Below are positions 4,760 to 34,100 of a stretch of DNA of 64,000 bases, in pieces (position 1 is the first letter of the stretch; every line of letters starts with the position of its first letter). This DNA is from Haliotis rubra (lineage: Eukaryota): positions 248,001-312,000 of the forward strand of contig NW_025767356.1 in assembly GCF_003918875.1 (NCBI RefSeq), read 5' to 3'. The notes beneath the pieces are model-generated. The model saw nothing but the letters and a program-made list of their open reading frames with translations, searched no databases and was not told the origin of the DNA. The translations under genes were made by a program, and so were the position numbers.

Positions 4760-4908
4760 GTGAGGGAGTGAGTTAAGTTTTACACTGTTTTTAACAATAT
4801 TCCAACAATATCACGGCGGGCAACATCAAAAATGGGCTTCACACATTGTACCTATATGGGGAATCGAACCCAGGTCTTTCGGCTTATCCACGAGGCTCCC
4901 CCGCCGCC
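4760..4908 (-). mobile_element. SINE family A (degenerate)
   Basis: Reverse complement of the family A sequence. Confidence 0.7.
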
Positions 4909-5078
4909 GGTGAACACAACATGAAATCCACTTTCGTGAGCACCATGTGTCATCACTAATTTCCACGGATCCTTTCATGTAATGTGCCACAATTGTGGGT
5001 GTTTCGTCGAGTGGAATATGTCTCGAGGCTGCTTTTCTCTGGCATCGGCGTTCTATACTGCAATGGAAGTGTTCACGG

Positions 5079-6820
5079 ATGCCAACTGATCATGACCGTA
5101 GACATGTACTGTTACTCCCTGGAATACAAGGTAAAGCGGCCCAACCTAGTTCTCTTAGATCAGATTATTGTGTAACGTCTGGCTAAGATTCATCAGGGAC
5201 GGAGGGTTAGCCCAATGGTTAAAGTCAAGTCATACCGAAGACCCGGGTTCGATTCCCCACATAGGTACAATATGTCAAGCCCATTTCTGGTGTCTCCCGC
5301 AGTGATATTGCTCGAATATTGCTAAAAGTAAAACTAATCTTACTCACTCACTCACTAAGATGCAACCGACAGAAAGTTGTCAAGCAGTTGATAAGGAAAT
5401 AACATACCTCGCGTGACTATCTTTTGTTATCCACTCGTGATACTTTGATATGATGGTCCTAGTTCTGATTTACTTCACGACGTTGTCGAGGGACTTGGAC
5501 GCAGTGATGGTAAGGCGATCGTTTAGATGATTGTAAACTTTGCAGGTTGGAAGTCGACGTGTAAGAAATGGTGATGGAAGAAATGTGTTCATGTTCGTGG
5601 AACTATACCTGTCAGTTTTGTTTCAGATAATGATATTATGATCATCGTCGCCGCGTGTCTCATCGCAGTGCTCTCTGCCGCTGCCATCGTCATGGGCTGC
5701 TGTTTCATGAAGCGGTGAGCAGATGTTGTTTCAACTACTCAATACCTTATCCTTTCCTATAATGTCACATTCGATTGTATGGCAAACGAACAGCACATAT
5801 TGGCTGTCACGCTAATTCCAAATCTGAAGTTTCACTTCATATCGAACAACAGCTTATGGTGTCTATTTCCCCCTGCATAGGTTGTAAAGAACAACCTATG
5901 TCCTTCCTCAAGGTAACATAAACTTTACAATGTACCAAGGTTTTACATCTTGCACAAAGTCCTGATTTACCAATATCATTACGATTATATCTGTAAGCTT
6001 TGTTTGTAAGAAATGCTGTTCAATTCGGAGATCAACTGCAACACTAATCACACGTTCACATGTCTTCACGTCAATGTATTCTCAGATGGTATTGTTAATG
6101 CCACACCCGCACGTTGAACACGACCAGGATAATACAGCGAGGCCCCGTATGGTAGAGATGATATCTGCACTGGGTGTTTGATTGTTGTATTGATATCATC
6201 ACATAAATATTAATTTGTTCACCGGTTTATTGCTATAATGTAGAGATATTGTTGTACAGGCTCGACAAACAGGCATGTTATCATTTAATTATAGCCATCA
6301 CACTTATTTGTTGGCCATGAATTTCACAGATCGATTTGATATAATATTCAGTTTGTAATTCAATTAAACATACTTGTCAAATGTACACTGACCAACCCGT
6401 GTGACATGTCAGTATACTTGTGGAAATCATACTACAGTAGGCTGATTGATTAATCTATCTGTCTTCTCCTCCAGGACCACGCTAGAGACACGGAAGCCTA
6501 CTGTATCTACTAGCTTGCCACGGCGGTTGGAGACGAACGCTTACACGAACACGGACACCAGGGATAAACACATGCCATCATGCAGCCACCACGGACAAGC
6601 CAATCGTACGTCAGGATCCGGGTATGACAGGCTGCATATAGGGAAAGACAACATTCTGAAGTTCACCGACATGGAGCCGGATTCAGCACAGATATACAGC
6701 CATCTGGCCAGACACGAAGCAGACATGGACTGGGCCGACGTCTATGATACGACGTTGCGTCAGCTTGGCAGAAAACGAGCGGATGGATCCTACAATAAAG
6801 TAACCATTCAGGAAAAATAG
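5079..6820 (+). CDS. G2: single-pass membrane protein with ITIM-like tail and no detectable lectin ectodomain
   Basis: TM exon 5627-5714 (NDIMIIVAACLIAVLSAAAIVMGCCFMKR). Last exon 6475-6820 (SGYDRL, IYSHL, VYDTT, SYNKV). The upstream exon ending at 5130 (phase-1 donor gtaaag, candidate ATG 5079) is uncertain. Confidence 0.75.
5196..5356 (+). mobile_element. SINE family A
   Basis: A/B boxes, (ACTC)n tail, flanks ctaagat(t/g)ca. Confidence 0.8.
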
Positions 6821-8997: not shown

Positions 8998-9949
8998 TAC
9001 ATGTGGAAGAAATGATAGGAAGTTAGCTGGGCAGTTGCCGAGTGCGGCGTTAGAGAACAGCACAATCTGATTGATGGATGGTTGTCACATGTGAATTATT
9101 TCGTTTGACGATTGCGGTTACTGCAATACCAAACATTACACGTTTACCATTATTGAAAATGGCTCTGGTGATATATGTAAAAGCCTTTATCTCGTGAGGT
9201 GAGAGTCCCTCGAACACAAATGGAGCACATGTTGCCCGGTTATTTAGGTAAAAAAATCGCGATGCAGAGTTTGGGCTAAGGGCATGGCGGCACCCGCTAA
9301 TTGAGGGTTCGAATCCAGATTATGGTCGTAGGTTTGTCAGCAAGACAGTGGTAAAGATCTGAAGCCTGCATCAATTCGGCTTTTCCTCCCACATATAGTT
9401 AACACGCTGTAATAGCACAGGAATATTGTTAAACGAGGCATTCAACACGCGCACCCAGCCTAAAGGCTAACCAGGTCGGCTATTACGTAGCGAAACTTAG
9501 AACAATATCGAGAGATATGGTTAACGTCCGTGTTCCCGTCCGATGCAGTTGTGAAAATACAGCACAAAAAGATTCACGATATCTAACACCATGGTTCAAG
9601 CTGACACCTAAAGGAAACACAGTAGTGGAAGTACGGCTTGACGCATGTTCCTCGATCAGGCTTCAGCTGGGTATCTACACTGGTGGAACAGGCAAGATGC
9701 AGGCAGATGGTAAGTAGATATTTCATCCCCTCATAAACAACTCAGTCATGTAACTGGAGAAGCGAACTTGGTACTTTTCGAAAAAAACGTCAAACATTAT
9801 CCAGAATAATTGTACAGTTCCTTGTCAGTTGAGTATGACCAACATACTTTAGCAGTATTATTCCACTGTGAAATTTCAAGTAAAAAAAGATCCCCAAAAA
9901 CTGTTGCGCCTGAAATGGATCCAGTGTCCAGTCGCGGTGGTTACTTCGA

Positions 9950-10036
9950 GTGAGTAGTGTCGGACCCAGTGAGTAGTGTCGGACCCAGTGAGTAGTGTCG
10001 GACCCAGTGAGTAGTGTCGGACCCAGTGAGTAGTGT
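9950..10036. repeat. 19-bp tandem repeat, about 4.5 copies
   Basis: gtgagtagtgtcggaccca. Confidence 0.95.
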
Positions 10037-10844
10037 TGCCTGTTGCTTTGTATATCAACCACTGATTTCTGTGGCAAACAACTATGAATACAAGTGATTG
10101 TGATTGCAAGTCCCGCGACATACACCCACTGTGTTTTGAAATTGCAGGTAGGAAAACGGATTTATAATAACGCATTTCATTTTAGAGGTACTATAAATCC
10201 GTTTTACTACCTTTAATTTCACAACACACTAGTTTATCTACATTTTACAGAGACAATTGAATGAAATATTTCAGTTAAAACTCTTTCTTTGGTAAGACCT
10301 CTTTTTAATATGTGATGCAGCCTCGCTTTCTAGTCTCAAGTGGTATTGCTCCAAATTGGCTGATAGGCGGTTAAACCGTCTGAACAAAACAAACACCGGC
10401 CTCGGTAATTACAAACAACTAATAACGTCTCGTTTATTCACTGTCATTAATCACAAAGGAATAACCAGTCCGTGTATTTTGTAATTAAATTCGATTCTAC
10501 GGATATTGTGTCCATTATTTTTGAAATTGTGTTGTACATCAAAATGTATCAAATTTAATCTGATTCGGTGACATGATTGCGAGGCTGCTGAATAACAGCT
10601 GGAGTTGGGGGGACAAATTTTTTATTAATATTTCTGAAAGGATACAAACGAAAATGGGGGTGACCGCTGGCATAAAAACGGTAAAGTTATTAATTGTACT
10701 TCATGAGGCTACTCTACTTCAAGCAATGTAACGGATCAGAGGAACCATGAAACAAATATGTTGGGCTAAACGCAGAATGGATGAAGTGAATTTTGCAGCT
10801 TCTGTACAAACTGTGGAAAGTATATCTTTGTCATAACAATATCG

Positions 10845-11321
10845 CAGTCTAAGTAAACTTAGGCTCAGTATTATTCGTTACATTGCTATACTAACAAAAC
10901 TTTGTAGAAGGTCGCGTAAGCTAACCTTTGAGCAACCTATGAGCGTCGAATCAAACGCGAGACGGCCGAACGGATTTAATCAATCCGACAACGACTACTT
11001 GTTAGGGTTCGGTGGGACTTACAAAACGGTTTTTGGTTTTTCTCTTCCCTGGTCGCTGACACATGTACCAACAACATATATTTGACCTGCAGTATATCTT
11101 TGGGGTTTCTAATGACATGGTTACTATTAGCATATATTTCCGCAAGATGACATCCTTGAATATTGACAAAAACGCTATATGTTTACTCATTGCGTGTATC
11201 ATGGGGAAGCGATCGTGCGGAAAATAGTATTCGGAATCTTTCGAGTTGTTTAGGTACAGGTTCAAACGGTATGTGCGAATGTTAACTTTCGCGATTAATG
11301 AGCCTGAGTTTACTTAGACTG
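10845..11321. mobile_element. MITE with about 10-bp TSD (Mutator-like)
   Basis: TIR cagtctaagtaaact(t/c)aggctca, flanks aacaatatcg / aacaatgtcg. Confidence 0.7.
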
Positions 11322-12052
11322 AACAATGTCGTTTAGTTTGAATTAATAATCGAGCTGTGGACAGAAGGCTTTCTTTCGGCGTTAGATGTCAAAGCATCAT
11401 ACCGGGTCCGGACCAACGCCGATATCGTCAACAAAATCTGATAAATTTACATTTAGTCTGTAAATTATGTAAGAGTTAATCGATTTATCTGTTTTGGCTA
11501 AACATTCCAGACAAGTAAACGTTTCTTGTCTTGCCGAATTGTTCATCGGAGGCAAGACGACGTTTTGGCCTTGCTCGACTGAATGATTATGTTTTGCTCG
11601 TGAAATTGTTTGTGCATATAATCATATATTTCTGTGATTGAGTGAAGTACTGAGTCGGGCCCATTTTCAAAAACAAATGTGTAATATCAGACAGCAAGAT
11701 TGCCGTAATGTCGTAATCGGGTGTTTGTTTGCTGTCGGCCAAGTTGGTGGGCAAATGAAAATAGAGCATTACCGTAAACTATGAATAATTGCGCAGATGA
11801 CATACCCCGGAATGACATGAATTACCTAATCACAATCAAGTTACTGTATTTCCTGGAGTCGTAATTGATTGTAGTTTCTATGTGCATGTTTATCTGGTGC
11901 CTTGGTAAGCGTAATTTACTGAAAAAGTGTAGTCCCAAATATAACGTGTTACATTTGACCACTTTCTAAATGGTACCGTGTATTTATAGCTTTCGGTCGC
12001 GGGAACCGTGCCAATTTATCTGTTTGATTGGCATTTAGAAGTTGGTGACTAA

Positions 12053-12357
12053 TAAGAAAGTAAGAAAGTTTATGGATAACAACTTCTTTATTATATATGA
12101 TGCGACGTTTCGGTATGGATTCTTATACCGTTGTCAAGCTTCCTATTGTCACTTATTGCCACCGTGCCTTGTTGTTGTTGTTAATCCCCCTGATTCAGTC
12201 CTACATGTTGTTATTACTTAATCCCTGTTCATGTATATAAGTCTGTTCTGTGCTGCAGTACTTCACTCTTGCCTGACAACGGTTTAAGAATCCATACCGA
12301 AACGTCGCATCATATATAATAAAGAAGTTGTTATCCATAAACTTTCTTACTTTCTTA
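12053..12357. repeat. About 85-bp inverted repeat, Penelope pLTR-like
   Basis: 12053-12138 is the near-perfect reverse complement of 12271-12357 and contains ctgacaa-cggt...accg-aaac. Confidence 0.7.
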
Positions 12358-12432
12358 CGTGCCAATTTACATTTATCAGAGGAGTACACAAAGTCCTTGG
12401 CTTACTCTACCAGTTGTCAGAATTCCATGTTT

Positions 12433-12600
12433 AGGGAGCCGCGGTGGCAGAGTGGGTAAGATGGTTGACTTTGTTTGCTGGTGTATCTGACTCTGACAGT
12501 GTGGGTTCGAATCCCGGATGGGATTAAACCCAACAAAGATACTAAAATCTGTAGTGTACTGAGGAAGTGTAATGCCAAATATAACATGTGTCACAGGTGG
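12433..12600 (+). mobile_element. tRNA-headed SINE family C
   Basis: gtggcagagtggg...ggttcgaatccc, related copy at 18325-18480. Confidence 0.6.
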
Positions 12601-13101
12601 TTTCACGCATCATATGACATTTCATTGTTCTTAGAAGATATATCGGCATGGTATTAATAGTGAATATGCACCTATATGAAAGATAAATTGACATTCACAG
12701 TTCCTTTACATAATTTAGGTAGAAAATATCGTTTCGAGTGACGGCAGAGTTGCTGGACAATGATATGAAGTGTACGTGGTAACTGTAAGCTACTGTAGAC
12801 ATTATACTATTAACACGTTCTAGTGCTACATGCTGTGTCTCTGACACTTAAATAGAGCCAGTCTAATTTCGATGTATACATGTGACAATCTACAATCGAT
12901 TACGATTTGCAATCGATTACAACTTCAAATTGTTCATAACTTCTGAGCGATGTTTCAGGGATAACTTGTGTTACTTTCATACAGAGCGAACGCGAGACTC
13001 ACATGAACAGTGAGGCATACATTTACAAAGTGCATAAATACCATACACCTGTTATGTGTGATGACAAATTTAATGAGCATCGTGTTATGTCATATATCCA
13101 G

Positions 13102-15027
13102 AAAACTCGACATTCCATTCTTCTTGCCACCCTGCAAGTTGGTCTTCAGCAGCGTCAAGCTGCGAGGAGACACATGGCACGATCTTCAGTATCTATGACT
13201 TGAGAACACGTCGAGGTGGACAGGAGGTGCAGGATGCCCTGAGAGACCACGGGGAACTTTGGATTCAGAACAACTGGACGGGTAAAACATTCTCTGTTGT
13301 TGTTCCAGACATATTCTCCTCTTGATAAGCTACTCCAACACAATTACGACATCTCTGTCACAGCATGGTACGTTTGCCGGGATGTTTAACTTCAGGAATA
13401 CAGATGCTCTGACATCATTCACTAACAAACCACCTGTTAAACTAGATACCAGATTCAATACCGGATCGACATGCTAGCACAACAATTACGTCCCTAATGC
13501 ACTATATACACTTGTATACAGTACCTGGCGGAATGCACGTTGACGAACTTGATTCCTGCTGATCGGGATACTCTGTGATTGTCATCGTAAGAATATACAG
13601 CTAAGAGTTCACACAATTATATTTCATCGAATGAAGCTAAATTATATTTTATTTCCAGGAATCATGTTTAGTTTCTGCAATGAGTATGATGCTAAGTAGT
13701 GTGTTGCCAAGGATGACAACATGATGCTGAATTCTGCTGTACAAGGGAGTGTTATATTCCATATTGTGTCTGATTACATGTATGAGGCTGAGTCACGTTT
13801 CAGTACCAGGAATGGCTATTTGGCTATAATAGGTTTTCCCACCAGGGATGATTATGATGACAAGTAATTTTTAACAGGGATGAATGTGGTGCTAATATAT
13901 GTCTCAGTACCAGGAAAGAGGACATGTATAATACTGCTTTGTTTTGTTACAAGATGCTAAATTATGTCTTTTAGCAGGACTGAACATCATGCTATGTGAT
14001 ACCGATGAATGGCGCAGATTAATGGTAAAAGGGATAAACTTGGTGCTGGGTAACACCTCATTACCAGGGATGAGACTTATGCCATATGATCATTTGTTAC
14101 CTTGGAATAAGTGTGATGATATATTGCGGTTTAATACGTAGGCATGATGCTGAACAATGTTTTCGTTTGAGCGATGAGCTTAATTCGAAATTAGCCTTTG
14201 AAGCCAGGAACTGCAAGGGATGAGTATGATGCTAAGGTATGCTTTATTACAACGATGCTATATATGTTTCTTTGTGTTCCAGACTGGTCAAATACAACAA
14301 ACGGATATGACTGTGCTACTATAGTCAACGGAAGCATTACCTTTACACAGACCAACTGCAGCGCGTTACGACACTACCTGTGTATTTCCAATGACAGTAC
14401 GTATACGTAAAGGGGCCTATAAAACATAAACAGCATTTTTCATGTCCAATTCTGATTGACTGTAATAGGATATATATAATTCTTCCCGCCATCCAGCTGT
14501 TTGCCTGTTTAAACATTGATACAGATAATATATGTTTAAGATATATAAAACTAAACTAAGTTCCTCTTCCAACTTCTATTTTTGTTTTTCTACAGCTTGG
14601 CGAGGAAATGGTAAGTTCTATTCGTTCAATAGGGAAGGTCTACTCATTTCAGATTGGGTTTGCACAGAAATATACATATGGATTTAATTTCATTGATGTC
14701 TGCAGTTGCTTCAACTAAGAGAATAAAGCTACACATGGTAAAGATAATAATGTTGAGTACGTTTGAACATTCATCACACCCATACGTCTTGAAGCATTGT
14801 GGACAGAGGGGTTGTAATTCAGTATGAACTTTATTTTTCCCAGGTTCACAATGTGTCCAAACTACAACCATGCCATGGATATTTGGTACGTATATACCGT
14901 TCCTTGTTACTAATGTTTCGAAGTATATGTATGCATTCCGTATATCCAGTGGCTTCGTCACGCTCGTCTAATACTAAAGGTCTAACCATTTGGTATGCCC
15001 CGTATACTATAAAATTCATCATCATCA

Positions 15028-15060
<33 letters not shown>

Positions 15061-16644
15061 TCAGCATCATCGCCACTGATATTCCCAGTAACTGTCAACA
15101 ACTGTTCTAAATTTCCCCACCTAAATATTGTTGTCGTAAGAGGCAATTGTTGGTCATCCTTGGTGACGTCACCAACATGTTTTTACGTTACAGCCGGAAC
15201 TAAATGAATTTTGTTCGTTTCAGAGTCTTCGACATTTAATCAAACATCCCCTACACCACCAGCTGCAGACACATCACCAAGTACAGTATAAGTCTTTCGT
15301 TGTCGTTTCTAGTCACATAACCGTCCGCCATTGAATTCGTCACAATAAATAATCACTATGTGTTCAAGTTGCAGTTACACCTACACGGCAATCAATCTTA
15401 ATGTACACCATTCTTCCGCTATGTGTTTCAGGCGTCACCATGGTGTGTGTCCTTGTAGGGATGTTGCTGTTTGCCATAGCCGTCATCAGTGTTGTCATCA
15501 TTAAGATGTGAGGATGATCTGCAGTTGTTCAATGTCTGATATTTCACGGTTCTCTCGCCATCTCTCTTCTGTCAGTGCCATATACGTGCTGTTGGTTTCC
15601 ATGGTAACGTCGTGCTGCTGCTTTCTAGGGTAACGTCTGGGACAGTGATTTCTGGCTGTTTTCACATATGATTCTAAGCCGTTCACTCTTTCTCACACAT
15701 TTGTATCGCATGCAGCAGTTATAATCACACATGGTTATTGTTCGTTTCTGGAACATATTCTCAAATCGTTCCATTGTCGTCACCAAGTTCGTAGATTTTA
15801 AGTTCCTCAATCTAATAACGTAATCCCCATGGTTATGATACTTGTAAATGCTAACAGTGGCTTTTGATACAATGTTGTGCTATCATGCTTCAGGAGAAAG
15901 AGAAGGTTTCTTCACAACACGTCTTCCATGAATGCAAGCTTAACCACAGTGTCTTCAGTACCGGAATATGATCCTGATCTGCAACCTGAAAGTCCGATGA
16001 TTTTCTACACCGGTTCCTCCTTCGGAGAGAATATGTACACCGCAGCAGTTGACCAAATACAAGCAGACTACTATAACATGATAGACGACTTCACCACGGA
16101 CCAGCAACCGTCAATGAGCCTCACGTCAAGCATCCCGACGACTGCAAGGGTGCAAGGTCCATGCGCATATCCATCTGATCGCAAGTGCGGAGAGTCATCA
16201 AATAGCTATTACGAGATACAGGGTGACAGGTCCACAAAGTGCACGGATTCCTCATGTTATAAAGGAGAAGGGCGTCAGTCCGTGCTGTCAACGTCTGGCT
16301 TGTACTCCGAAATAGACGACAACGGAACGGACACCGACATCAGAGGCGTTCAGCCGGATCACTACGCCTATTTACACGCATTGAACCGTGCCTCGGAAGC
16401 ACCATCTCTGACAAACAGCGGTATCTACGATATTCCGAATGATCCTGCTACCGACTCTCACGATAGAAGACAGTTGGTAAGTGGCGAGTACGCTGTTCCG
16501 TACGCCTGTTCAGATGGCCTCAACACAAACCTACATCTTCCAGAGTCGCTTGATGACAAGTGTACCCAACAATCTGCAAGGAGTTCCTTGTTATCACGTT
16601 GTTCGACGGAACCTAATCATTATGACACACCGAATGACCTTTAA
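13102..16644 (+). CDS. G3: CTLD-like type I receptor with long Tyr-rich tail (signal exon not identified)
   Basis: Exons 13102-13281 (FHSSCHPASWSSAASSCEE...LWIQ), 14283-14396 (YDCATI...TNCSALRHYLC), 14596-14610, 14844-14885, 15224-15280 (S/T/P stalk, weak donor), TM 15432-15507 and tail 15894-16644 (YYEI, YSEI, YAYL, YDIP, YAVP, YDTP). All phases are compatible. Confidence 0.85.
15016..15072. repeat. (ATC)n(GTC)n microsatellite
   Basis: Read directly from the sequence. Confidence 0.9.
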
Positions 16645-16736
16645 ATCGCCGTAAGCAGGAAGGTCAAACATTGCCTGAAACAGTATACTATTCCCTTATA
16701 CGCCTATGATTTGTTGGGTAATGTGTATAATTGAAA

Positions 16737-16871
16737 NNNNNNNNNNNNNNNNNNNNNNNNNNNNNNNNNNNNNNNNNNNNNNNNNNNNNNNNNNNNNNNN
16801 NNNNNNNNNNNNNNNNNNNNNNNNNNNNNNNNNNNNNNNNNNNNNNNNNNNNNNNNNNNNNNNNNNNNNNN
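16737..16871. other. Assembly gap
   Basis: Run of N. Confidence 1.
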
Positions 16872-18012
16872 AATCCATAATAATTTGTTTAAATCAAATC
16901 ATTTGGGACAAATGCCGGCATCTTGGTAGGATGAAAAGGATGTTCTTATTTTTCTACGAACAGTTATTGTATGCTTATAGACATGCTGACAATATGTTTG
17001 TACAGTAGGCCACGGCAGGGATTCCACCCCAGGTAACTCTCCTTAGTGGAACCCACCAAGCACTATCCCTAAAATGTGACGACTCGCTAATACTGCAGTC
17101 TTCTACGTTATCCAGAGTGGCAGAAGGGCCTCGCGGCGAACCTGGGTAGTCTCCGTCAAGAGATTTGTGAGTCCCAGAATCGTGCCAATTACATCATTGT
17201 CCAACTGGGCAAAAAACTCCATGACATAAATGATTTCGTGGGATGTGGCCAAAAGGGCATGGTCAGTATTGTTGGCCTGGTCGCGAATGTAAATAGTCTT
17301 GTACTTTTCACTTCTGATCAATGTGAGTAATTTGAGTCAGATACTGTGTCAGACACTGAACGGTCGTTTCCATTACACAGATATTACGGACGTCTTGGCT
17401 CACAGCATAGCCTTATTGATCATATGATGTCGTCCGTTTTTATAACATACTACTTCAATGTCCCTTTAATGGAAGTATTGTGACACAGGTTACTGATCAC
17501 GGAATCAGTTTGTATGATAACAGAATGGCCCCAAGTAATACACCGTAAACTTGTTTTCAGTTTCCATCATGTACATATCATTCTTTCGTGATTTGGTGAA
17601 AATAAAATCTGTGTAACTTCAGAAGGCTTCGTGATCGTATCTGTCTCCATCGATGTGTACAGATTCAAACTGTACATGCCACGCCCACACGTGGTGTCGT
17701 ATAGCCATAAAGCTTCTACACGTATTTACTGTGCACACGGGACGTGCAATAGCATCGCAGCAATCCAAGCAGAAACAGATAGTCGTGGGTATGTTTGTGT
17801 TCGTGGAATGTTCTTGCGATCTTACAGAGTACCTCCTATTTTGATGTGGCAGGCTCTCATTGGTTTGTGCAGTTCAGTACATAGTACCCGTATTGATGTT
17901 AATTTGGCGCTGGAGTCAGAGTTTTAACGCATTCTTATGTCCCAATGTTATGCTTAGGTGCTGATATGCAGGTCGGTGCACGTTTTACCTTCATATAGGT
18001 AACATCACCTAA

Positions 18013-18163
18013 GTGAGTTAGTATGGTTTTACGCCGCCTTTAGCAATATTTCAGCAATATCACAACAGGGGACACCAGTTCACACATTGTACCCATGTGG
18101 GGAATCGAACCCGGGCCTTCGGCGTGACGAGCAAACGCTTTAACCACTAGGCTACCCCACCGC
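18013..18163 (-). mobile_element. SINE family A
   Basis: Reverse complement of family A. Confidence 0.8.
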
Positions 18164-18575
18164 ATGTGTTATCTTTCTCAGTACTGGGAAAGTGTAATCC
18201 CAAATATAACATACATGTGACCACTTTCTAAAGGTATCGCGTATTCATAGCTTTCGGCCATTGGAGTCGTGCCTATTTACACTTGTCAGAGAGGTATGCA
18301 AACTTCGTGGTCTAGACTACCAGTGGTCTGCGATGGCTGAGTGGGTTAGATCACTGACTGTGTATGCTGGCGAAAAGGTGCCTGACTCTGAGAGTGTAGG
18401 TTCGAATCCCTGATGGGCGTAAACCTATAATAGTTCTAGAATCTGTACTTTACTAAGAAAGTGTAATTTCAAATGTAGCATAACTTGCCATGCTTACTTG
18501 AGTATTTATTGTTGAATTGGTTCGAATTAAGTGAAAACGCAAAAGTAGCACGTCCAGGCTGACATTATACGAACT

Positions 18576-18653
18576 GTCGCCCTGCTGCCGTAACATCGCC
18601 CTGCCGTAACATCGCCCTGCTGCCGTAACATCGCCCTGCTGCCGTAACATCGC
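18576..18653. repeat. 19-bp tandem repeat, about 4 copies
   Basis: tcgccctgctgccgtaaca. Confidence 0.9.
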
Positions 18654-19270
18654 ACGCTAACTATACCCTATGGATTCTTATGAAAGCAATTGAAATAAAT
18701 ACCTGTTGCTCGTCTGAAGGTATAACTACATATATCAGTATGTGTGATGGGTAGTAAGGTAATCCATGACCTACTGCCTTTCCATGTTTTGTATGGTGTT
18801 GACTACGTCAACCATGTTAGTCAGGGTATATTATGTGTGGTAAGTGCATGTTGTCGAATTCGACACAGATCATCAGTTTCACTGTCAAATTTAAGCACAC
18901 AAATTACAAAGCATTTTGATTTGAAACGCAATTTTGTCTTCTGGAAATTGACTGTTTGAGATGCACAACCCCATAACAAAACAAATACCTCCCCATTCAA
19001 AACGCAGTCTCTTTGGCTATATAGCATAGTACTGAAGAAGATTACAGATATCCGTAAAAGTGGTTTAACAAAGTTTTGACTCTGATAACTATCAATATCT
19101 CCAAGGTGATATCGGCGGAATGACCCTGTCTACTGTACCCGGACACTCACAGTTGTGAAACAACGTATGATGTTGGATTTCCTCTTGTTTGCGGTAGTGC
19201 AGTGTGTATTCTTGACGGCCTCTCAAATGACATAGCTCCATGTGTTGCAGGACATATAGTGTGTACGTTG

Positions 19271-20987
19271 ATGGAGGGTAAGTACATGGTTTTGAATAAC
19301 TGTCCTGTCCAATTAATTCTTATTCAACCTGTATTTTGCGTATTTATGCATGTGTGTGTGTGTTTGTGTGTGTATGTATTTGTGTGTATGTGTGTATATT
19401 CGCTCTGTAATGATATGGTTCTAGATAAATAAACAACAATTTCCACCTCACCAAAACAATTGCAATATTTTTGGTGTACTGAAGAGATTGCTTTGTGTTC
19501 CTCTTCTATGTCTCAAATTATTCTTCAGAACAGTGACATAATACAGACCTGATATTGATATCGCACACAGTGAATTTTAGTATCAGTTTCAGAATAATTG
19601 TACAAAATCACTATGGATGCTTCCTCCTTTAACCACACGTTGGTGAATTGTGCTTCCGTGTTAATATACTTTTACTGGACATTGTTGCGATTTCTGTATT
19701 CGAGATCAATTTCTTCTAGAGAAGCTAGCAAGATATATAAGCCCGGGTGTTGTTCGCATCATAATTGCTTTTCATGATTACCTGTAGTACTTATTTCTGG
19801 ACTTGATTACAAGACATCGTGATACTGTAGAAGATATTCTGTATTTCAGACATCACCGTCGCCGTCGTTCCATGCATCATAGGGGTGATTCTCGTCACGT
19901 GCGGTTTCACCATCAAGCGGTTAGTTATGACGTTATGGAGATTTCGTTTCCAACGGTTCGGGTAAATGGTTCGGGTGAATGGAACAGTGTTGCTCAATCA
20001 GAATTTCAAAAAGTATACAATCTTGACATCAACGTACAATAATTACCAGCCTTAAATACCTGCCGGGACAGCTTCTACAGGGAGTAAAATGCCAAGTAGT
20101 CATGTACAATTCAGTCGTGGCACTACATGTTCAGAATATCTTCCTTGTTCAACTGACAGTAACACGCAGTATGTCTCATAAAGGTCGCATTTGCACCAAA
20201 TATGTTAGTTTATAAAGTAAACATGTAATCTGAAGCGAAGAACTTGATATTTTCCAGCCGAAAGCTAATCTCAGGACATAACTCGTCCACAGATGTAAAC
20301 GTCTCATCACCAGAGAGGAAACCAGCCGATAAAGAAGGATCGGAACCATTTTACGCCAACGTGGACGACTTGAAGCCAGATCCTGGGCGACCAGTTGGCG
20401 TCAGGTCAAGCCATACTAACACTAAAAGGAAGAAAGGAACAAGGGCATCTCACGCTGTTCAGTCCTCTAGGTGTATGCCCGAGATACAGAGTATTGTGTC
20501 GGATACATGCAGCATCGACTCCAGTGAGGATGGCGGAGAAGGACATCAGTCAGAACACAGCATAAGTCCATCAAGTATATATTGTAATACCCAGAACCTT
20601 ACATCAGACACGGCAATCTACTCGAACTGCTCGGTCGACAGATCCCAGGGTAGTGTAAGACTCATTCAACCAGATCACTACACCTACCTAGACACTGTGC
20701 ATCGCCCCATGGAAGCAGGATCTACACAGCAGAGTGACATCTATGTTAATACTAACGTACCTGCTCAGGGAGGATCTACAGAACAACCAGACAAATCCAC
20801 TTACTTAGACCCTTTGCCCGGTTCATCAGTGCTGGGTATTCAATCTGAAAGTGACTTGTATGATCTTCCATACGCGTTCACAAGAAACCGTAATGTACCC
20901 GTGTCGAAACATGATCACTATGTTAATATATTCCCAGCGAAAAAAGAAACGAAAAAGAAAAAGAAAAAGTCAAATAAGAAACGTTAG
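19271..20987 (+). CDS. G4: putative type III transmembrane adaptor-like protein with multiple YxN motifs
   Basis: ATG GAG G at 19271-19277 precedes a gtaagt donor. TM exon 19850-19919 (DITVAVVPCIIGVILVTCGFTIKR). Tail exon 20258-20987 (YANV, YCNT, YSNC, YTYL, YVNT, YLDP, YDLP, YVNI, poly-Lys C-terminus). The start codon is inferred. Confidence 0.8.
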
Positions 20988-23303: not shown

Positions 23304-26300
23304 ATGAAGATCGTTTGTGTCCCTCTGTGTGCAGCATCACTTGCTGTGTACGTGATGTTTCTTGGTTTCGACAATATGGACCAAGTACACGGTATGGTAT
23401 TATTCATTTATTTATCATAAATTTCTAAACTTCCCCAATGCTCACATTAACGAAGCCCGACAGTGTAATTTGACTCTTAAATAAGAGCAGACCGTTGGTT
23501 TCCTCCTATAAATGTTTTCGATTAAGTGGGCATCTAATTGATGAAACAACAAAATATATATTCGGAAACATATTCACGGTCGCCGAATTGGTAGCTCGTA
23601 ACACAGTTCGTGTCAGATGCTTTCAGAGGACCGATATACATGTACATATCATCCCAATTACACTGTGACCAAAATACACCAGTAAAGCTGATTATTTAAC
23701 ACAGATAAATAACCTGACGAAAAATCAAATGTCTCGACAATTCAACTTTTGTGACTTTATATAACATACAACATTAAAAGTCAATCTTTCGTCCCGTTGC
23801 TGTTGTTAAATATATGTTTCTTTCTTTTAGTATGACATCTTCCGACACTCGTTGCGAAACAACAACAAAAAATCCAACCGTCCTTTAGTTTATTCAGAAA
23901 TAATAGCTGTGCACGGATTATACTTACAAAATATATCCATCTCAAATTCAGTGTGGAAGTGAAACAGTACTCTTTCGGTAAAATCTCCAAACCATGTTGA
24001 GAAGACTCTAAATTCTCATACTTTCCAATACAAATATTTCCCTTTTATTTAACTTTGTATTCATTGTAATTGTTTTTGTTTCATTTCCCACGATTACGGT
24101 TGTTTGCGAGTGTATATTATACACGAATAAACACGGTTGCACTTTCGCGTTATTTCTCCATTTCCCTCTAAGCATTGTGACCTATGAAGAAGAGTTTTTA
24201 CAAAATTCAACAATCATCATGTTGTTTCTATAAGAATAGAAACACAGACAAACCGTTAAATATTCAATAAATTTGCCTATGTGATGTAAAACCATTCTTT
24301 GCTACAAACGTGGGGAGGTCTAGAGTTGGCTCAGTCACATTTGCGTACCTTGGATAAGAGCTGATTAGGAGTTTGAATCCCTGTTACCGCAATTATGTTT
24401 CTTGGTTTTTGAGCATCATACCCACGCTCGTTGGTTTCATGAGACTAGTAAATGCTCGTACCTGCATTACATTGCTTTGCCTGCCACGTTAGGCTACCAC
24501 GCCGTGATGCAACTAGAATACTGTTAAACCTGGACACTCACTCACACACAATGTCATCATATATATTTCAAATTAGATATCACAAGTTAAATATAACATA
24601 GTACTTTGCTCATGCACTGTTTCAGTTTGATGCTAGGGCTTGAACATTGTAACACATTTGTGCTTTTAAACGATTATTATGAATGCATATCACTTTGGTT
24701 CTTCAGCTTCCGGGCCACTCGGAGACAATTGTGTAAGTGTAAACTTCGCCATGGCTGAGAACGACTGCAAATATAGAAACAGATCATTATTCACCTTATC
24801 GGATTTGAAAACATCAAGAGGTGGACGATTTGTTCGAAATGTTACAACTATCCTCACGGAAATTTGGATACGAGGTGACGAGAATGGTAAATGAAACCAC
24901 TTATCCTGAACCTATGAGTGTTTTTTGTATTTTGTTTGGTCAAAATGTATCACTGATAATTACAACAACGACGAAAACCCAGGGACTACTTATTGAATGA
25001 TTATTGATTGAATTACTTGTTATATGCACAAACAATGTATGTTTACATCATAATCATATACATGTTTATATATCGTTGCAAACATTCAAAACACGGCGGA
25101 TACAATACAACGGAAAACCGAAACGTAAGCTTAAATATAAAAACAACAAGTGTTAATGCATGTGCTTTGTTAACCGATGCTTCTCTGGTTTGATTTGTTA
25201 TCATGATGTTAACCTAACTCATCTGTTTTACACGCCGCAGGTTCGTGCCAAACTTATCTCCGTTTGCCAACAAAGGGAAGTGCAAACAAGAGTAAGTGTC
25301 AATTGATTGCCTGTTCCAGACTCGATTATTTACAGACCGCCGCTAGAAGCTGGAATATTGCTGAGTGAGGCGTAAAACTCCACTCACTCACTCACTCATA
25401 ATCTATTGCAGCGAAGTTCATTGTANNNNNNNNNNNNNNNNNNNNNNNNNNNNNNNNNNNNNNNNNNNNNNNNNNNNNNNNNNNNNNNNNNNNNNNNNNN
25501 NNNNNNNNNNNNNNNNNNNNNNNNNNNNNNNNNNNNNNNNNNNNNNNNNNNNNNNNNNNNNNNNNNNNNNNNNNNNNNNNNNNNNNNNNNNNNNNNNNNN
25601 NNNNNNNNNATTGTATCATCTGAATTTATTTTACAACAGCTGACGAAGATCTGAAATTTCAAAGAGCCAACTGTGACGATCAGCATCACTACGTGTGTAT
25701 ACAGCATGCTCGTAAGCATTTTCATTCATCAACATCGCTTATATATCATTTCGTTTCTAATACGTATAATATTGACTACATTCACCATATGTTTACGTAC
25801 CAGTAGCAAAACTGCTAATATACAACCGGAAACTTTAACTATTGTTCCATTCTCTAATAAACCAGCTTCAATATTTCAATAATCCTATTTTGACATGTTT
25901 TTTTTGTACAACGAAATCAGATCTGGAGCCTCAGTACCATCCTGCTTGTTATGAGAAGACATCAGAGGTTACATTCGGTAATCTCCACCTATTTCCAACT
26001 ATTCATTGATATCATTACGTTATCGGTAACTGGCAAGAACTGGGTGCCAATGTCCTAAACAACCTTAGTTCAACAACAGTTGTAAACCTATGTTAACATA
26101 TGTTAGTCTGTGCTTGGGAATTCCTGTAATTAGATAGTTTTGTACAACGGTACAGAGGTAATGTGCATTTATACAATTGTTCTTCGTCGGACACAACTTG
26201 TTTGTTGTAAGTTCGTCGCCGCCTAACCCCCAAAGAAAGCATTCGCTTTGTGCAGATGCTTATACTACAAACTAATCACTGTGTTTGTCGTAATACTACC

Positions 26301-31149: not shown

Positions 31150-34100
31150 ATGGCCTGTCCACGACAAGTGGTCGCTTGCTGTTTGACATTGGCAATAATA
31201 ATGGCTAATGCCACACAAATTGAGAGTCGTTCAAACGCAGGTACGTAACGTTTTACTTCCATGAGATCTTGTCATTATGTTACGGACCTTTTAACCCCTA
31301 TAACTAAACATGAACTGACATACGGACATAGGACTGGCCTGACATAGACCTTGGCACATCAGACATTGATCTGCACTCCCAACACAATGGACACACCAGA
31401 CATTGATCTGCACTCCTAACACGGATGACTCACAAGACATTGATATACACTCCCAACAAGGAGGAATCACCAGACACTGATCTGCACTCCCAACACGGAG
31501 GATTCACCAGACACTGATCTGCACTCCCAACACGGAGGACTCACCAGACACTGATCTGCACTCCCATGTTACGAACAGGCGCGTTTCGTATTTTAGTATC
31601 GTAAATATTTCCACATATATCAAAAAAAATTGCCGGCCATATATATCTCCCACCATTTTTCGGCTGTTGTAGCATCGTCAAATAAAAGACCTCAGCAAGT
31701 AGCGAGCGTATGTTCGAATATCCAGACATGAGGTCAAAATAGAACAATGTTTTGTTAAGAAGGTCACATGCAACCAAAAAATCAAACATAATTAAAACAC
31801 AATTATCACTTCTTCATGACATATAATATGCATTGCTGATTATGAAAAAACAAATAAACAAAATTATAAGCGTATAATCGCAAATCAAAAGTGCAATATT
31901 TTGTACTTTGGGTTTACCTCCCTCGAAACGAAGCAGCCGGGATACCAAACCCAGTCAGAGCGGGTGGGTGTGCACTCAAGTGTAACGGCTGGTTCATTAG
32001 CAGATGCCGCCTCACAGCTCATTGTGTGTGTATATATAGAGATGTTGGGTTTTGTAAATACATGCTCATTTTTTGTGTATAACATTTTGCAATCAACAGA
32101 CATCATAACATGTAATGTGTTCAAGTATCACACCTGCCTGTCTGTGTAATTACATAATGTGACAGAGACCGAACTCGGGCCATAAATCAATGCGTTTTGT
32201 TTATGGTGTATAGCCTGATTGGTGTTAAGTTCAAATTGCATGTGGTCAGTGATCGCAGTTGTGTATTGATTATTGTCATTAGCAGACAGGCAGGCAGACA
32301 CACAGGTGTCAATAAAACAAGACATTGAGCTTTGTCTGTGACAGCGACATATCTATATCACAGTTAGAAATTGTGTCAACGCTAAATAATGACATTGCTT
32401 TTAAGTATCGAACTGAGAAAGTGACTCGGTAAGAAGAACGTGTGGTGAAATAGACAAATGAAATTATATAAACAGTTTATTTACTGTCATAACATATAAA
32501 AAGCTCGCGCCTGTGAGATATCAACAAAACATTAGGAAAATAGCTCACACCAAAGCCTTCACCGAGTATTCACCAGACAGCCCGCTTCTAAGTTGCGCGA
32601 ACCTATTTCACTGCGCACGTGCTATGAGCGCAGCCCAGCTGTTGAAACCCGTATTCCCCAGAAAAGTCTGGGGAAAATTAGTGAAACGTTTGAACTCCGA
32701 TTTCGCGCGGTTTTTTCATCGCGTTATTTTTCAACTTTATAAGTTGAATTTGCATTTTTGACGCTTTGTTTCGGTAAGTCCATACCGAAAGGTATCAGAA
32801 TCTGCAAAGTTGTGTTTTACGTTGCATGTGACCTTTAACATAACGCTAGGAATACTTCTTACCTTTTATTAAAAAAATATTCGTTATTTTTGTGACAATC
32901 TATTTGAGATTTGATTTTCCTTTTCCTATAACTACGCTTCATTATTTATTGGTCATTTCGATTTAGTGCATAACATTGTTCCACAATGAAATAGGCAGTC
33001 GTAAGCTTATTATCGAGTTTATGTTTAGATTGGCCGTGCATGGAGTCATACAGGAACAAATCGGCATACACAAGAGTTTTACATATTGTGCATGCTGGTT
33101 CTGAGGTTTGTGCGTCCGGGAACCCAAGAAATTGTTGATGTAACGTTTAGAGGGAAAGAGATGTAATTCTGACCTGACACACCTGTTATGTTTTCATGAA
33201 GGGAATAAGAGTTTCCACGTATCGTGCCACCCTGCACACTGGATCCTGGCTCAGATGACGTGCAAACAGAAACAGGGAGCCATGTTTGAGCTGGATGATC
33301 TGAAGAAAAGCTACGGCCTGCCCATCCTGCAAGCAGCGTTGCGAGATGTCGGGGAAATATGGATTAGCAGGAAGAAAACAGGTAATGGGCAGATCATTGA
33401 GCTTGAGCTTCCACTGTGTTTGAATGGACCGCGTTATCCAAATTTGGGACAGGGAAGCAACTCCTGATGGCTTGTATGTACTGGGTGCGGTGGATGTGTA
33501 CACTTTGTATATCCACTCCAGGGGTCGATCAAAATATTCTGTGGTTTGCTATAAGAGGCTTCTAAATCGTATCGGCGACTTATTTCCGCGTTCCTGAAAA
33601 GATGGACCACTGATTTGTTTCATTCGATATTGTATTGAAGTGATATAACCACAACATTGCTGGCTGTAAAGCAAGAAAGTACAAATAATTAAACAATGCA
33701 CGCAGATAGACATATAGTATGACCAGAAATTATTGAGAATTTTAGGAAAATGTTTAATTGGATTTCTAGTATAAACAACCTTGACCAGCTATCAAGTGCT
33801 TGGTTTCATTCAAGAGAGACAACTCTGTCAATCCTTTTTCATTAGTTTGTGAAGAGTTATCCCCCTTTGTTTACTTGCTAGCAGACGACATTTTCAGTGA
33901 TCCTCTGTATGGATGATTTAGAGAAGAGGAAGTTGATTTTAGAGTATTATAACAAGGACATCAGATCAGCTAAAGTAGAACAGGCATCCCTTTGCCCACT
34001 GTTTATCGTGTTTTGAAAAATATTGCAAATGGATTATGGCATTGAGCACCAGGGAGGCGCAGGTAGGCCCAGAAAATTGACTGTCGGTGACAGGAGGCGG

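What the first reader, a model, noticed from the sequence alone, without database searches (positions are those of the whole stretch)
19251..20987. G4 looks like a LAT/NTAL-style transmembrane adaptor
The predicted start MEDITVAVVPCIIGVILVTCGFTIKR has no signal peptide and almost no ectodomain; an in-frame TGA lies upstream at 19121. The disordered tail has five YxN sites (YANV, YCNT, YSNC, YVNT, YVNI), the established Grb2-SH2 consensus, plus YLDP and YDLP. This architecture defines vertebrate lymphocyte transmembrane adaptors. An adaptor embedded among tail-poor receptors (G5, G7, G8) suggests receptor-adaptor coupling, probably by convergence.
Basis: partly seen in the sequence, partly recalled or inferred. 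Interest (0 to 1): 0.8.

Follow-up and report, generated by a model that had tools for sequence, protein, structure and literature searches.

The report
Ectodomain-less tyrosine-tail membrane protein, abalone
An abalone gene, a copy of the neighbouring lectin-like receptor that seems to have lost its outer part, encodes one membrane helix and a floppy inner tail with four conserved Grb2-type docking tyrosines, so it looks like the LAT/NTAL adaptors of vertebrate immune cells without being related to them; its function is untested.

Summary
The window is Haliotis rubra. It has three coding pieces: ATGGAGG (19271-19277), a TM exon (19850-19919) and a tail exon (20258-20987). Orthologues with the same start exist in H. 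asinina and H. rufescens. A spliced contig in an RNA-like run crosses the TM/tail junction.

The five YxN sites are far above chance (0.54 expected). Four are conserved in all three species, with the Asn invariant and the middle residue free.

New here: the tail is homologous to that of the upstream lectin-like receptor G3. The start codon lies in the relic of that family's last lectin exon, with identical donor geometry. Sequence upstream of the ATG carries frame-breaking indels and stops. So G4 probably arose from a receptor copy that lost its ectodomain. At aligned tyrosines the paralogues carry YxxP where G4 has YxN.

It is not a LAT/NTAL homologue (no Pfam hit, no CxxC). No transmembrane charge supports direct receptor pairing. 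The 5' end was not confirmed by reads, and uATGs are a caveat. Phosphorylation and Grb2 binding are inferred only. The scan noted ectodomain-less receptor paralogues at two other places in this genome.

The parts
18726..18956 (+). Probable decayed relic of the family's N-terminal lectin-like exon (open frame closed by a stop at 18957). Not part of the coding sequence.
   Evidence: A profile of 8 paralogue N-terminal exons hits the orthologous H. asinina place L001:9603-9665 (score 6.0, independent E 5e-4 for one sequence, about 4e-3 for the 9 frames searched), and stops follow there. The rubra match at 18852-18902 is weaker (score -3.7). Suggestive only.
19134..19150 (+). Conserved non-coding block (TACCCGGACAYTCA core) about 135 nt upstream of the ATG in all three species. 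Candidate promoter or 5'UTR element.
   Evidence: Seen in the sequences printed and in alignment A3. Function not tested.
19198..19270 (+). Upstream part of the relic of the last lectin-domain exon, now non-coding (5'UTR or promoter-proximal). It holds acceptor-like AGs at 19196-19197 and 19249-19250.
   Evidence: The translation ...APCVAGHIVC aligns with the paralogue motif C-x4/5-H-x-x-C. Between rubra and asinina it differs by a 13-nt and a 1-nt indel, which put a TAG in frame 36 nt before the asinina ATG. DNA runs X5-X7 lack 5 nt at 19213.
19271..19277 (+). Coding exon 1: ATG GAG G, then donor gtaagt (phase 1).
   Evidence: Equals the RefSeq model. An ATG at the same place is followed by a GT donor in H. 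asinina and H. rufescens. The donor lies at Cys + 4 codons + 1 nt, exactly as in the last lectin exons of G3, G5, the 35.9 kb gene, G8 and G9.
19850..19919 (+). Coding exon 2: the transmembrane helix (DITVAVVPCIIGVILVTCGFTIK, phase 1 to 2), with conserved Cys20 near its inner end.
   Evidence: Splice sites are conserved in three species. Hydropathy scan. AlphaFold helix 3-28.
20258..20987 (+). Coding exon 3: basic stop-transfer RRK, a roughly 240-aa disordered cytoplasmic tail and a C-terminal Lys/Arg-rich end; the stop is at 20985-20987.
   Evidence: The ORF is intact in three species and all CDS indels are in frame; dN/dS is 0.54-0.71. It is homologous to the G3 tail at 15868-16641 (blastp E 4e-9; alignment). 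RNA-like contig X1 record 8 covers 20259-20911 after 38 letters that lie on 19882-19919.
20352..20360 (+). Y58-A-N, a conserved YxN site (YVN in asinina, YGN in rufescens).
20580..20588 (+). Y134-C-N, a YxN site found only in H. rubra (Arg in asinina, YSE in rufescens).
20619..20627 (+). Y147-S-N, a conserved YxN site.
20742..20750 (+). Y188-V-N, a conserved YxN site. The aligned tyrosine in G3-type tails is YDIP.
20802..20813 (+). Y208-L-D-P. The tyrosine is conserved (YLDV in asinina).
20859..20873 (+). Y227-D-L-P-Y231, invariant in three species (YxxP type). G3-type tails have EYA(V/I)PY, apparently the corresponding motif (not placed in the same columns by the alignment).
20919..20927 (+). 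Y247-V-N within the invariant KHDHY(V/I)N, a conserved YxN site. G3-type tails have HYD(T/I)P, apparently the corresponding motif (not placed in the same columns by the alignment).

Best explanation
G4 (H. rubra LOC124257052) is a real, spliced, Haliotis-restricted gene. It encodes a 268-aa single-pass membrane protein with two or three residues outside, one helix, and a roughly 240-aa disordered cytoplasmic tail. It is a tandem paralogue of the neighbouring lectin-like type I receptor G3, and its lectin exons have decayed. Its start codon lies two codons before the donor of what used to be the last lectin-domain exon. The tail keeps seven tyrosines in three species. Four are YxN with an invariant Asn, and two or three are YxxP-type.

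Inferred mechanism: after phosphorylation by a Src/Syk-type kinase, which nearby receptors would activate, the tail acts as a membrane-anchored multivalent docking scaffold. It would bind a Grb2/Drk-type SH2 adaptor at pYxN and a Crk-type SH2 at pYxxP. That is the way LAT/NTAL work, reached independently.

Shown: the gene structure downstream of the ATG, its conservation, the motif enrichment and conservation, and the paralogy with G3. Inferred: the exact 5' end, the topology, the phosphorylation, the partners and any link to the neighbouring receptors.
For: - The model equals RefSeq proteins in three species, and the spliced CDS translates exactly.
- Splice sites are conserved.
- The TM/tail junction is present in a spliced contig of run X1. 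Record 8 has letters 39-691 on 20259-20911, and the depth bins place the first 38 letters on 19882-19919.
- Selection: dN/dS is 0.54-0.71. Rubra versus asinina has 50.8 synonymous changes over 179.5 sites against 105.2 non-synonymous over 618.5 sites (my z-test, about 3.4). All CDS indels are multiples of 3, against 3 of 12 in the 600 nt upstream.
- Motifs: 5 YxN against 0.54 expected. Four are conserved with invariant Asn and a variable +1 residue. Columns around conserved tyrosines are 60% invariant against 29% elsewhere (Fisher P = 8.5e-5).
- Paralogy: the tails of G3 and G4 match at E 4e-9 and align motif by motif. At aligned tyrosines G4 has YANV and YVNT where G3-type tails have YTAA and YDIP; G4's HYVNI appears to correspond to their HYDTP, which the alignment left unaligned. 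P0005 has 0 YxN among 23 tyrosines.
- Ectodomain loss: no lectin-exon homologue lies between G3 and the G4 TM exon in three species, apart from faint relics carrying stops. Rubra and asinina are colinear across the whole interval, and the stretch spanning the N gap (rubra 16707-17032) corresponds to about 226 nt in asinina. The exon 1 donor geometry is identical to the paralogues' last lectin exon. The frame upstream is broken in asinina and in runs X5-X7.
- One helix plus a disordered tail.
Against: - No read evidence for the 5' end. Only DNA contigs cover 16872-19850.
- The ATG has a weak context (T at -3), and uATGs lie 31 and 44 nt upstream (29-45 nt in the other species).
- A conserved acceptor-like AG at 19249-19250 (phase 1, compatible with the phase 1 signal-peptide exon of G5) leaves room for an upstream exon.
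- The three RefSeq models come from the same pipeline, so they are not fully independent.
- dN/dS is only moderately below 1.
- There is no CxxC.
- The relic matches are statistically weak.
- No evidence at all on phosphorylation, on an abalone Grb2, or on tissue of expression.
- X1 is only guessed to be RNA, and it comes from a sequence about 2% different from the window.
Confidence: 0.58

Rival explanations
1. G4 is an ordinary full receptor. Unannotated signal-peptide and ectodomain exons upstream (in the gap at 16737-16871 or elsewhere) splice into 19198, 19251 or the TM exon, and the ATG at 19271 is an internal Met.
For: The ATG lies in an open frame running from 19124. Its end aligns with the lectin C-terminal motif of six paralogues. 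Acceptor-like sites lie at 19197|19198 and 19250|19251. uATGs and a weak Kozak context surround the ATG. The 5' end is not covered by RNA.
Against: tblastn and profile searches find no intact lectin exon between G3 and the TM exon in any of three species, and the faint N-terminal relic carries stops. Rubra and asinina are colinear, with only about 226 nt opposite the gap region. The frame from 19198 is broken by a TAG in asinina and by a 5-nt deletion in X5-X7. Three RefSeq models start at the same ATG.
Confidence: 0.1
2. G4 is a signalling chain of the DAP10/DAP12/FcR-gamma style. A still-unrecognised signal-peptide exon splices into the phase 1 acceptor at 19251. The mature protein would then have about 10 outer residues (xHIVCTLMED) whose conserved Cys makes a disulfide-linked dimer. 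The tail would work as in the main explanation.
For: The acceptor-like ttgcag|GACAT is conserved in rubra and asinina, and tgccag|AAGAC stands in rufescens. The frame is open for at least 8 codons upstream of the ATG in all three species, with H and C conserved (HIVCTLM, HTACPQM, HILCILM). The G5 signal-peptide exon ends in phase 1, which is compatible. The uATG at -31 would then be intronic.
Against: No signal-peptide exon was found, although the search is uninformative because these exons diverge fast. Four of the seven codons before the ATG differ between rubra and asinina, all non-synonymously. The exon length would be 27, 30 and 29 nt in the three species, so the phase is not kept in rufescens. 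No acidic residue lies in the TM and there is no conserved ITAM.
Confidence: 0.1
3. G4 is a transcribed, decaying remnant of a receptor duplicate with no function of its own. The open tail is chance survival.
For: The ectodomain exons have decayed. Nucleotide identity of the tail exon between rubra and asinina (about 75%) is barely above that of the flanking non-coding DNA (70-76%). dN/dS is as high as 0.71 in one pair. The family is found only in Haliotis.
Against: The 250-280-codon ORF is intact in three species and, where covered, in a fourth source (X5-X7). At least six indels are all in frame, against 3 of 12 in the neighbouring non-coding DNA. dN is significantly below dS. Conservation is island-like around tyrosines with invariant +2 Asn. 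ATG and splice sites are conserved.
Confidence: 0.1
4. G3 and G4 are one transcription unit. The G3 lectin exons can splice to the G4 TM/tail cassette instead of G3's own, giving one ectodomain two alternative signalling tails.
For: The two lie in tandem on the same strand, 2.6 kb apart, with homologous cassettes. The exon phases (1-1) would be compatible with the acceptor at 19251.
Against: No junction evidence exists. RefSeq keeps them as separate genes in three species. G3's tail exon ends in a stop and is followed by non-coding DNA. A conserved upstream block fits an own promoter better.
Confidence: 0.04

Closest known systems
NTAL/LAB (LAT2) and LAT, vertebrate transmembrane adaptor proteins
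   Same: No signal peptide, a very short outer peptide (NTAL 6 aa), one TM, and a disordered tail of about 200-240 aa. NTAL has about 10 tyrosines, five of them YxN Grb2 sites (PMC2196071, read). G4 has 10 tail tyrosines, five of them YxN. G4 lacks a PLC-gamma-type site, which makes it more like NTAL than LAT (my knowledge of LAT Y132/136).
   Different: No sequence homology (no Pfam hit; only Haliotis relatives). No juxtamembrane CxxC. A three-exon gene against the 11 exons of LAT/NTAL (PMC2196071). The origin is traceable to a lectin-like receptor. Biochemistry unknown.
DAP10 (HCST) and other short-ectodomain signalling chains (DAP12, FcR-gamma, CD3-zeta)
   Same: A tiny ectodomain, a single TM and tyrosine-based docking. 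DAP10's YINM includes a YxN Grb2 site (my knowledge).
   Different: Those chains have a signal peptide, an outer Cys for dimerisation and an Asp in the TM that pairs with a basic receptor TM residue, and their tails are short. G4 has no TM charge, no YxxM and no conserved ITAM. An outer Cys would exist only under rival 2.
The cluster's own lectin-like receptors (G3 = the 475-aa RefSeq model at window 9517-16644; also G5, G8, G9)
   Same: The cytoplasmic tail is homologous to G3's (E 4e-9), with the shared modules PDHYxYL...IYxx and EYxxPY. The TM exon followed by a tail exon has the same layout. The exon 1 donor is at the same place as their last lectin exon.
   Different: No lectin-like ectodomain. 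Tyrosine motifs are retuned from YxxP (YDIP, YDTP, YAVP) to YxN.
Other ectodomain-less tyrosine-tail proteins of abalone: H. rufescens LOC124136837 (P0005, 405 aa), and earlier scan notes s1-333072 and s1-353936 elsewhere in this genome
   Same: A short outer peptide, a TM and a long tyrosine-rich tail. P0005's tail is homologous to those of G3 and G4.
   Different: P0005 has no YxN at all and carries 6 YxxP. The two scan notes concern unrelated families (EGF-type and others) and were not re-examined here.

Membership tests
LAT / NTAL (LAT2) family | Sequence homology to LAT or LAT2 | tested here: not met
   Pfam scans of the tail exon and of P0001-P0003 at E up to 1 give only chance-level hits to unrelated families. 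HMMER against 1.84 billion representatives finds only Haliotis proteins.
LAT / NTAL (LAT2) family | No signal peptide and an outer peptide of a few residues (type III topology) | tested here: inconclusive
   Met on the RefSeq model: MED, then a roughly 22-residue hydrophobic stretch, then KRRK, and the same in two orthologues. The mRNA 5' end is not verified, and uATGs and an acceptor-like site lie upstream.
LAT / NTAL (LAT2) family | Juxtamembrane CxxC palmitoylation motif for raft targeting (PMC2196071) | tested here: not met
   No CxxC in any of the three orthologues. One invariant Cys (C20, VTC(G/A)FT(I/V)KRRK) lies five residues before the basic cluster. Whether it is acylated cannot be told.
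LAT / NTAL (LAT2) family | Several YxN (Grb2 SH2) motifs in a disordered tail | tested here: met
   5 YxN in rubra (0.54 expected by shuffling), 4 in each orthologue. Four are conserved with invariant Asn. The tail has pLDDT below 50 and no secondary structure.
LAT / NTAL (LAT2) family | Inducible tyrosine phosphorylation by Src/Syk-family kinases and binding of Grb2-Sos | not testable with these tools
   Needs biochemistry. The presence of an abalone Grb2 with the pYxN-selecting SH2 domain was not checked here.
Lectin-like (CTLD-like) receptor family of this cluster | Homologous TM-proximal region and tyrosine-rich tail | tested here: met
   blastp of the G3 tail against the G4 tail gives E 4e-9 and 32% identity over 143 aa. 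Multiple alignment with G3 orthologues and P0004. tblastn with P0005.
Lectin-like (CTLD-like) receptor family of this cluster | Lectin-like ectodomain exons: an N-terminal exon with W-x-x-A-x-x-x-C and a short last exon with C-x5-H-Y-V-C | tested here: not met
   The six paralogues have both exons. Their N-terminal profile weakly hits the CTLDs of PLA2R (E 3.4e-4) and the mannose receptor. G4 has only a stop-containing relic of the first and the non-coding remainder of the last.
DAP10 / DAP12 / FcR-gamma type signalling chains | Acidic residue in the TM helix pairing with a basic residue in the receptor's TM | tested here: not met
   No charged residue in the G4 TM. None either in the TM exons found in the window for G2, G3, the 37.7 kb gene, G8 and G9, or for H. 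asinina's G5.
DAP10 / DAP12 / FcR-gamma type signalling chains | ITAM (YxxL/I-x6-12-YxxL/I) or YxNM | tested here: not met
   No ITAM, ITIM, ITSM or YxxM in rubra or asinina. One ITAM-like match appears in rufescens only.

The most novel reading that the evidence does not exclude
Abalone has built LAT/NTAL-like membrane scaffolds on its own, by stripping the ectodomain from duplicated lectin-like receptors and retuning the tail tyrosines from YxxP (Crk-type) to YxN (Grb2-type). G4 would then be the Ras/MAPK-coupling hub for the lectin-like receptors encoded around it. That would be a convergent, lophotrochozoan version of the vertebrate receptor / transmembrane-adaptor division of labour. It would also be part of a wider habit of this genome, given the two other ectodomain-less paralogues noted by the scan and P0005.
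Probability: 0.3. Interest if true: 0.7.

Novelty: new variant of a known kind. Interest (0 to 1): 0.5.

Why it matters
Transmembrane adaptors of the LAT/NTAL/PAG type are regarded as a vertebrate lymphocyte and myeloid invention. How invertebrate pattern-recognition receptors with short or odd tails reach Ras/MAPK and the cytoskeleton is largely unknown.

This locus offers a datable, traceable route to such an adaptor. The steps are tandem duplication of a lectin-like receptor, decay of the lectin exons, a new start codon in the last lectin exon, and a switch of SH2-docking motifs. It also gives a short, testable list of residues: Y58, Y147, Y188, Y247, their +2 Asn, and C20.

If it holds, it is a clean case of convergent evolution of signalling architecture, and a handle on abalone haemocyte signalling. 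If it fails, it remains a lineage-specific uncharacterised membrane protein.

Tried and rejected
- Open frame 17592-17924 as a possible N-terminal lectin exon of G4. It does not align with the six paralogue exons and scores nothing with their profile. Rejected.
- Pfam on exon pieces and on whole proteins gave nothing usable. The lectin-like nature of the paralogue ectodomains rests only on a weak profile hit to PLA2R and mannose-receptor CTLDs.
- Search for a signal-peptide exon upstream of G4, using the G5-type first exon and the first exon of the G3 RefSeq model. The G5-type exon finds only its own orthologues and the G3 first exon nothing significant upstream of G4, so the blank is uninformative.
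- Reads. The only runs served were three DNA runs and one small RNA-like run kept as contigs. They confirm the TM/tail splice but say nothing about the first exon or the level of expression.
- TM-charge pairing with neighbouring receptors: no charged TM residues anywhere in the cluster.
- ITAM, ITIM, ITSM, YxxM, NPxY and CxxC patterns are absent or not conserved.
- The exact-sequence look-up of P0001 returned only the genome contig itself, with no transcript contig.
- Literature searches found no description of this family or of a molluscan LAT-like adaptor. That is absence in the held library only.
- N gaps were not filled or looked up. Only the length of the colinear interval in another species (H. 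asinina) was used.
Full report
**What the window is.** A word search with the tail ORF returned an identical 268-aa RefSeq protein of Haliotis rubra: XP_046546986.1, 'uncharacterized protein LOC124257052'. It also returned orthologues in H. asinina (XP_067686791.1, 279 aa, 64% identity) and H. rufescens (XP_046358702.2, 249 aa, 48% identity). The window is therefore blacklip abalone DNA. It carries a plus-strand tandem cluster of receptor-like genes. An all-against-all comparison of open frames shows three repeated exon families:
- An N-terminal ectodomain exon at 13077, 24670, 33144, 45288, 52674 and 59574.
- A short last ectodomain exon with the motif C-x5-H-Y-V-C at about 14300, 25650, 36000, 45750, 54090 and 61090.
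- Tyrosine-rich tail exons.

A profile of the N-terminal exons weakly hits the start of several C-type lectin-like domains of the PLA2 receptor (E 3.4e-4) and of the mannose receptor. Pfam itself does not recognise them. I therefore call them 'lectin-like' with reserve.

**The observation.**
- ATGGAGG|gtaagt at 19271-19277.
- A TM exon at 19850-19919 between tatttcag and gttagt.
- A tail exon at 20258-20987 after ttttccag.
- The three pieces translate exactly to the RefSeq protein.
- TGA at 19121-19123 is in frame upstream.
- The five YxN sites, YLDP and YDLP are present.

Five YxN among ten tail tyrosines compares with 0.54 expected from shuffles of the same tail, and none of 20,000 shuffles reached five. 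The two orthologues have four each (P = 0.001 and 0.008). AlphaFold, on only three sequences, gives one helix (residues 3-28) and no structure with pLDDT below 50 for nearly all of the rest. The flanks (MED before the helix, KRRK after it) put the tail in the cytoplasm by the positive-inside rule. Homology of the tail to the cytoplasmic tail of the type I receptor G3 says the same.

**Is it a living gene?**
- The three orthologous loci were fetched (L001 for H. asinina, L002 for H. rufescens).
- All three keep an ATG followed within 7-10 nt by a GT donor, the TM-exon acceptor and donor, and the tail acceptor.
- The ORF is intact in all three, and every indel in the coding alignment is a multiple of three. 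In the 600 nt upstream of the ATG, only 3 of 12 rubra/asinina indels are.
- dN/dS is 0.54, 0.71 and 0.54 for the three pairs. For rubra against asinina the excess of synonymous change is significant by my two-proportion z-test (about 3.4). Constraint is therefore moderate, as expected for a disordered tail.
- Constraint is concentrated around tyrosines. Seven of ten are invariant. Columns from -3 to +4 around them are 60% invariant against 29% elsewhere (Fisher P = 8.5e-5). In the four conserved YxN sites the Asn never changes, while the middle residue does (A/V/G, S, V/I, V/I). That is the signature expected of a selected pYxN site.
- One run guessed to be RNA (X1) holds a 691-nt contig whose letters 39-691 lie on 20259-20911. 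Its first 38 letters fall, by the depth bins, on 19882-19919. The TM/tail intron is therefore spliced out in that contig. This is my inference from the bins, because the joint row itself was among those not printed.

**Where it came from.**
- The G4 tail is homologous to the tail of the gene just upstream: G3, tail exon 15868-16641, blastp E 4e-9. RefSeq models G3 as a 475-aa protein spanning 9517-16644, and it has both lectin-like exons.
- The 'first exon' of G4 is the remnant of the last lectin exon. Its translation ...APCVAGHIVCTLMEG aligns with the invariant C, H and C of the six paralogues.
- Its donor lies at Cys + 4 codons + 1 nt in phase 1, exactly as in five paralogues: G3, G5, the 35.9 kb gene, G8 and G9. 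The G4 ATG replaces the paralogues' third codon after that Cys.
- Further upstream there is no intact lectin exon in any of the three species.
- The best profile match to the N-terminal exon lies in H. asinina at L001:9603-9665 (CRDQHRSLFTL followed by a stop). The orthologous rubra frame 18726-18956 is weaker and ends in a stop. These matches are faint, but they are in the right order, on the right strand and at orthologous places.
- H. rubra and H. asinina are colinear from G3 through G4. The stretch that includes the N gap (rubra 16707-17032) corresponds to about 226 nt in H. asinina. The gap therefore cannot hide an ectodomain. I used only that length and did not read or fill gap letters.
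- Between the possible old acceptor (19197|19198) and the ATG, H. asinina has a 13-nt deletion and a 1-nt insertion that bring a TAG into frame 36 nt before its ATG. The DNA runs X5-X7, which differ from the window by about 2-3%, lack 5 nt at 19213. That stretch is thus no longer coding.

**Motif retuning.** G4 was aligned with G3, with the G3 orthologues, and with a further paralogue (P0004, and P0005 = H. rufescens LOC124136837). The same tyrosines carry different motifs. G4 has FYANVD and IYVNT where the others have MYTAAVD and IYDIP. G4's HYVNI and their HYDTP both follow a D/N-H pair near the tail's end and look like the same site, but the alignment did not place them in one column. P0005 has 23 tyrosines, none YxN and six YxxP. 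The YxN set is therefore specific to the G4 lineage, and it arose or was kept after the duplication. P0005 itself has only 16 predicted outer residues before its TM helix. Ectodomain-less members thus recur in this family. Earlier notes of this scan report the same theme for two unrelated families elsewhere in this genome. I did not re-examine those.

**How it most likely works.** By established knowledge, the SH2 domain of Grb2 and of its orthologues Drk and Sem-5 selects pY-x-N, and Crk-type SH2 domains select pY-x-x-P. NTAL, with five YxN sites, binds Grb2-Sos after phosphorylation by Src- and Syk-family kinases (PMC2196071). The most economical reading is that G4 is a membrane-anchored multivalent phosphotyrosine scaffold that recruits a Grb2-type adaptor, plus a Crk-type adaptor at YLDP and YDLPY. 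This is inference from motifs and their conservation. Nothing here shows phosphorylation, a kinase, an abalone Grb2 or a cell type.

**What does not fit the LAT/NTAL label.**
- There is no homology.
- There is no CxxC. Only one invariant Cys (C20) lies near the inner end of the helix.
- Nothing supports direct pairing with the neighbouring receptors. No TM in the cluster carries a charge, and the H. asinina orthologue of G5 has its own tail with a YAN site. Coupling, if any, would have to run through a kinase, as it does for LAT.

**What remains open.** The 5' end.
- The ATG has a weak context, and small uATGs lie 31 and 44 nt upstream.
- A conserved acceptor-like AG at 19249-19250 is in phase 1, the phase in which the G5 signal-peptide exon ends. 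Three outcomes are possible:
  - A non-coding leader exon would change nothing.
  - A signal-peptide exon would give a chain of about 10 outer residues with one Cys, in the DAP10/DAP12 style.
  - A splice from the G3 lectin exons would make G4 an alternative tail cassette.
- Against a coding use of that stretch: four of the seven codons before the ATG differ non-synonymously between rubra and asinina, and the implied exon lengths (27, 30 and 29 nt) do not keep phase in H. rufescens.
- I put about 0.58 on the RefSeq-type protein acting as a docking scaffold. I put 0.10 each on a hidden full ectodomain, a signal-peptide mini-ectodomain form and a functionless remnant, and 0.04 on a shared transcription unit with G3.

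**Novelty and score.** The gene is already in RefSeq, unnamed. What is new is the reading: a convergent LAT/NTAL-like architecture in a gastropod, with a traceable birth from a lectin-like receptor and a switch of docking motifs. The family is confined to Haliotis in a library of 1.84 billion representatives. All functional claims are untested, so I rate interest at 0.5 and class it as a new variant of a known kind.

Noticed in passing
window 17929-18532 (core 18003-18168); copies at about 4764-5399, 37356-37552, 42404-42545, 50680-50859 and 54430-54614; also L002:9277-9440: A very high-copy interspersed repeat (SINE-like). Summed contig depth in DNA runs rises from about 50 to between 10^5 and 10^7 there, with many chimeric joints. 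It sits between G3 and G4 and recurs in the introns and intergenic DNA of the cluster.
   Followed up: partly
window 5575-5715 and 6446-6820 (+): G2: a TM exon (IMIIVAACLIAVLSAAAIVMGCCFMKR) followed by a tyrosine-bearing tail ORF, with no lectin-like exon family member detected nearby.
   Followed up: no
H. rufescens LOC124136837 (P0005, 405 aa), on the same 6.2-Mb contig as L002: Another paralogue with only 16 predicted outer residues, one TM and a G3-type tail with six YxxP and no YxN. A Logan contig (P0004) encodes a near-identical tail.
   Followed up: partly
L001:7112-7336 (H. asinina orthologue of G3): The last open frame of the H. asinina G3 orthologue is only 74 codons (RefSeq product 251 aa), against 258 in H. 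rubra and 267 in H. rufescens. G3's tail seems truncated in that species, although tail-like similarity continues downstream (L001:7599-7688).
   Followed up: no
window 34023-34880 (+) and 46228-46584 (-): A Tc1/mariner-type transposase ORF (Pfam DDE_3 at 9.5e-17 and HTH_Tnp_Tc3_2) inside the cluster, and a second helix-turn-helix transposase fragment (HTH_29, just under its Pfam cut-off) on the other strand.
   Followed up: partly
window 51990-52472 (-): An ORF with an FRYIDDLISF motif that looks like a reverse-transcriptase fragment. There is no Pfam hit at E 0.01.
   Followed up: partly
window 19134-19150; L001 about 9865-9880; L002 about 9850-9866: A TACCCGGACAYTCA block conserved in three species 125-150 nt upstream of the G4 ATG, inside otherwise indel-rich DNA. 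Possibly a promoter element.
   Followed up: no
window 9517-9711 (+): The RefSeq model of G3 (475 aa) starts 3.5 kb upstream of its first lectin-like exon. Its first exon (MVNVRVPVRCSC...) does not look like a signal peptide and has no Pfam hit. The G3 model may be fused or mis-started.
   Followed up: no
window 23304-26009 (+): G5 is modelled as only 161 aa in H. rubra, but its H. asinina orthologue has 273 aa with a TM and a tail of about 90 aa. The rubra model is probably cut by the N gap at 25426-25609.
   Followed up: no
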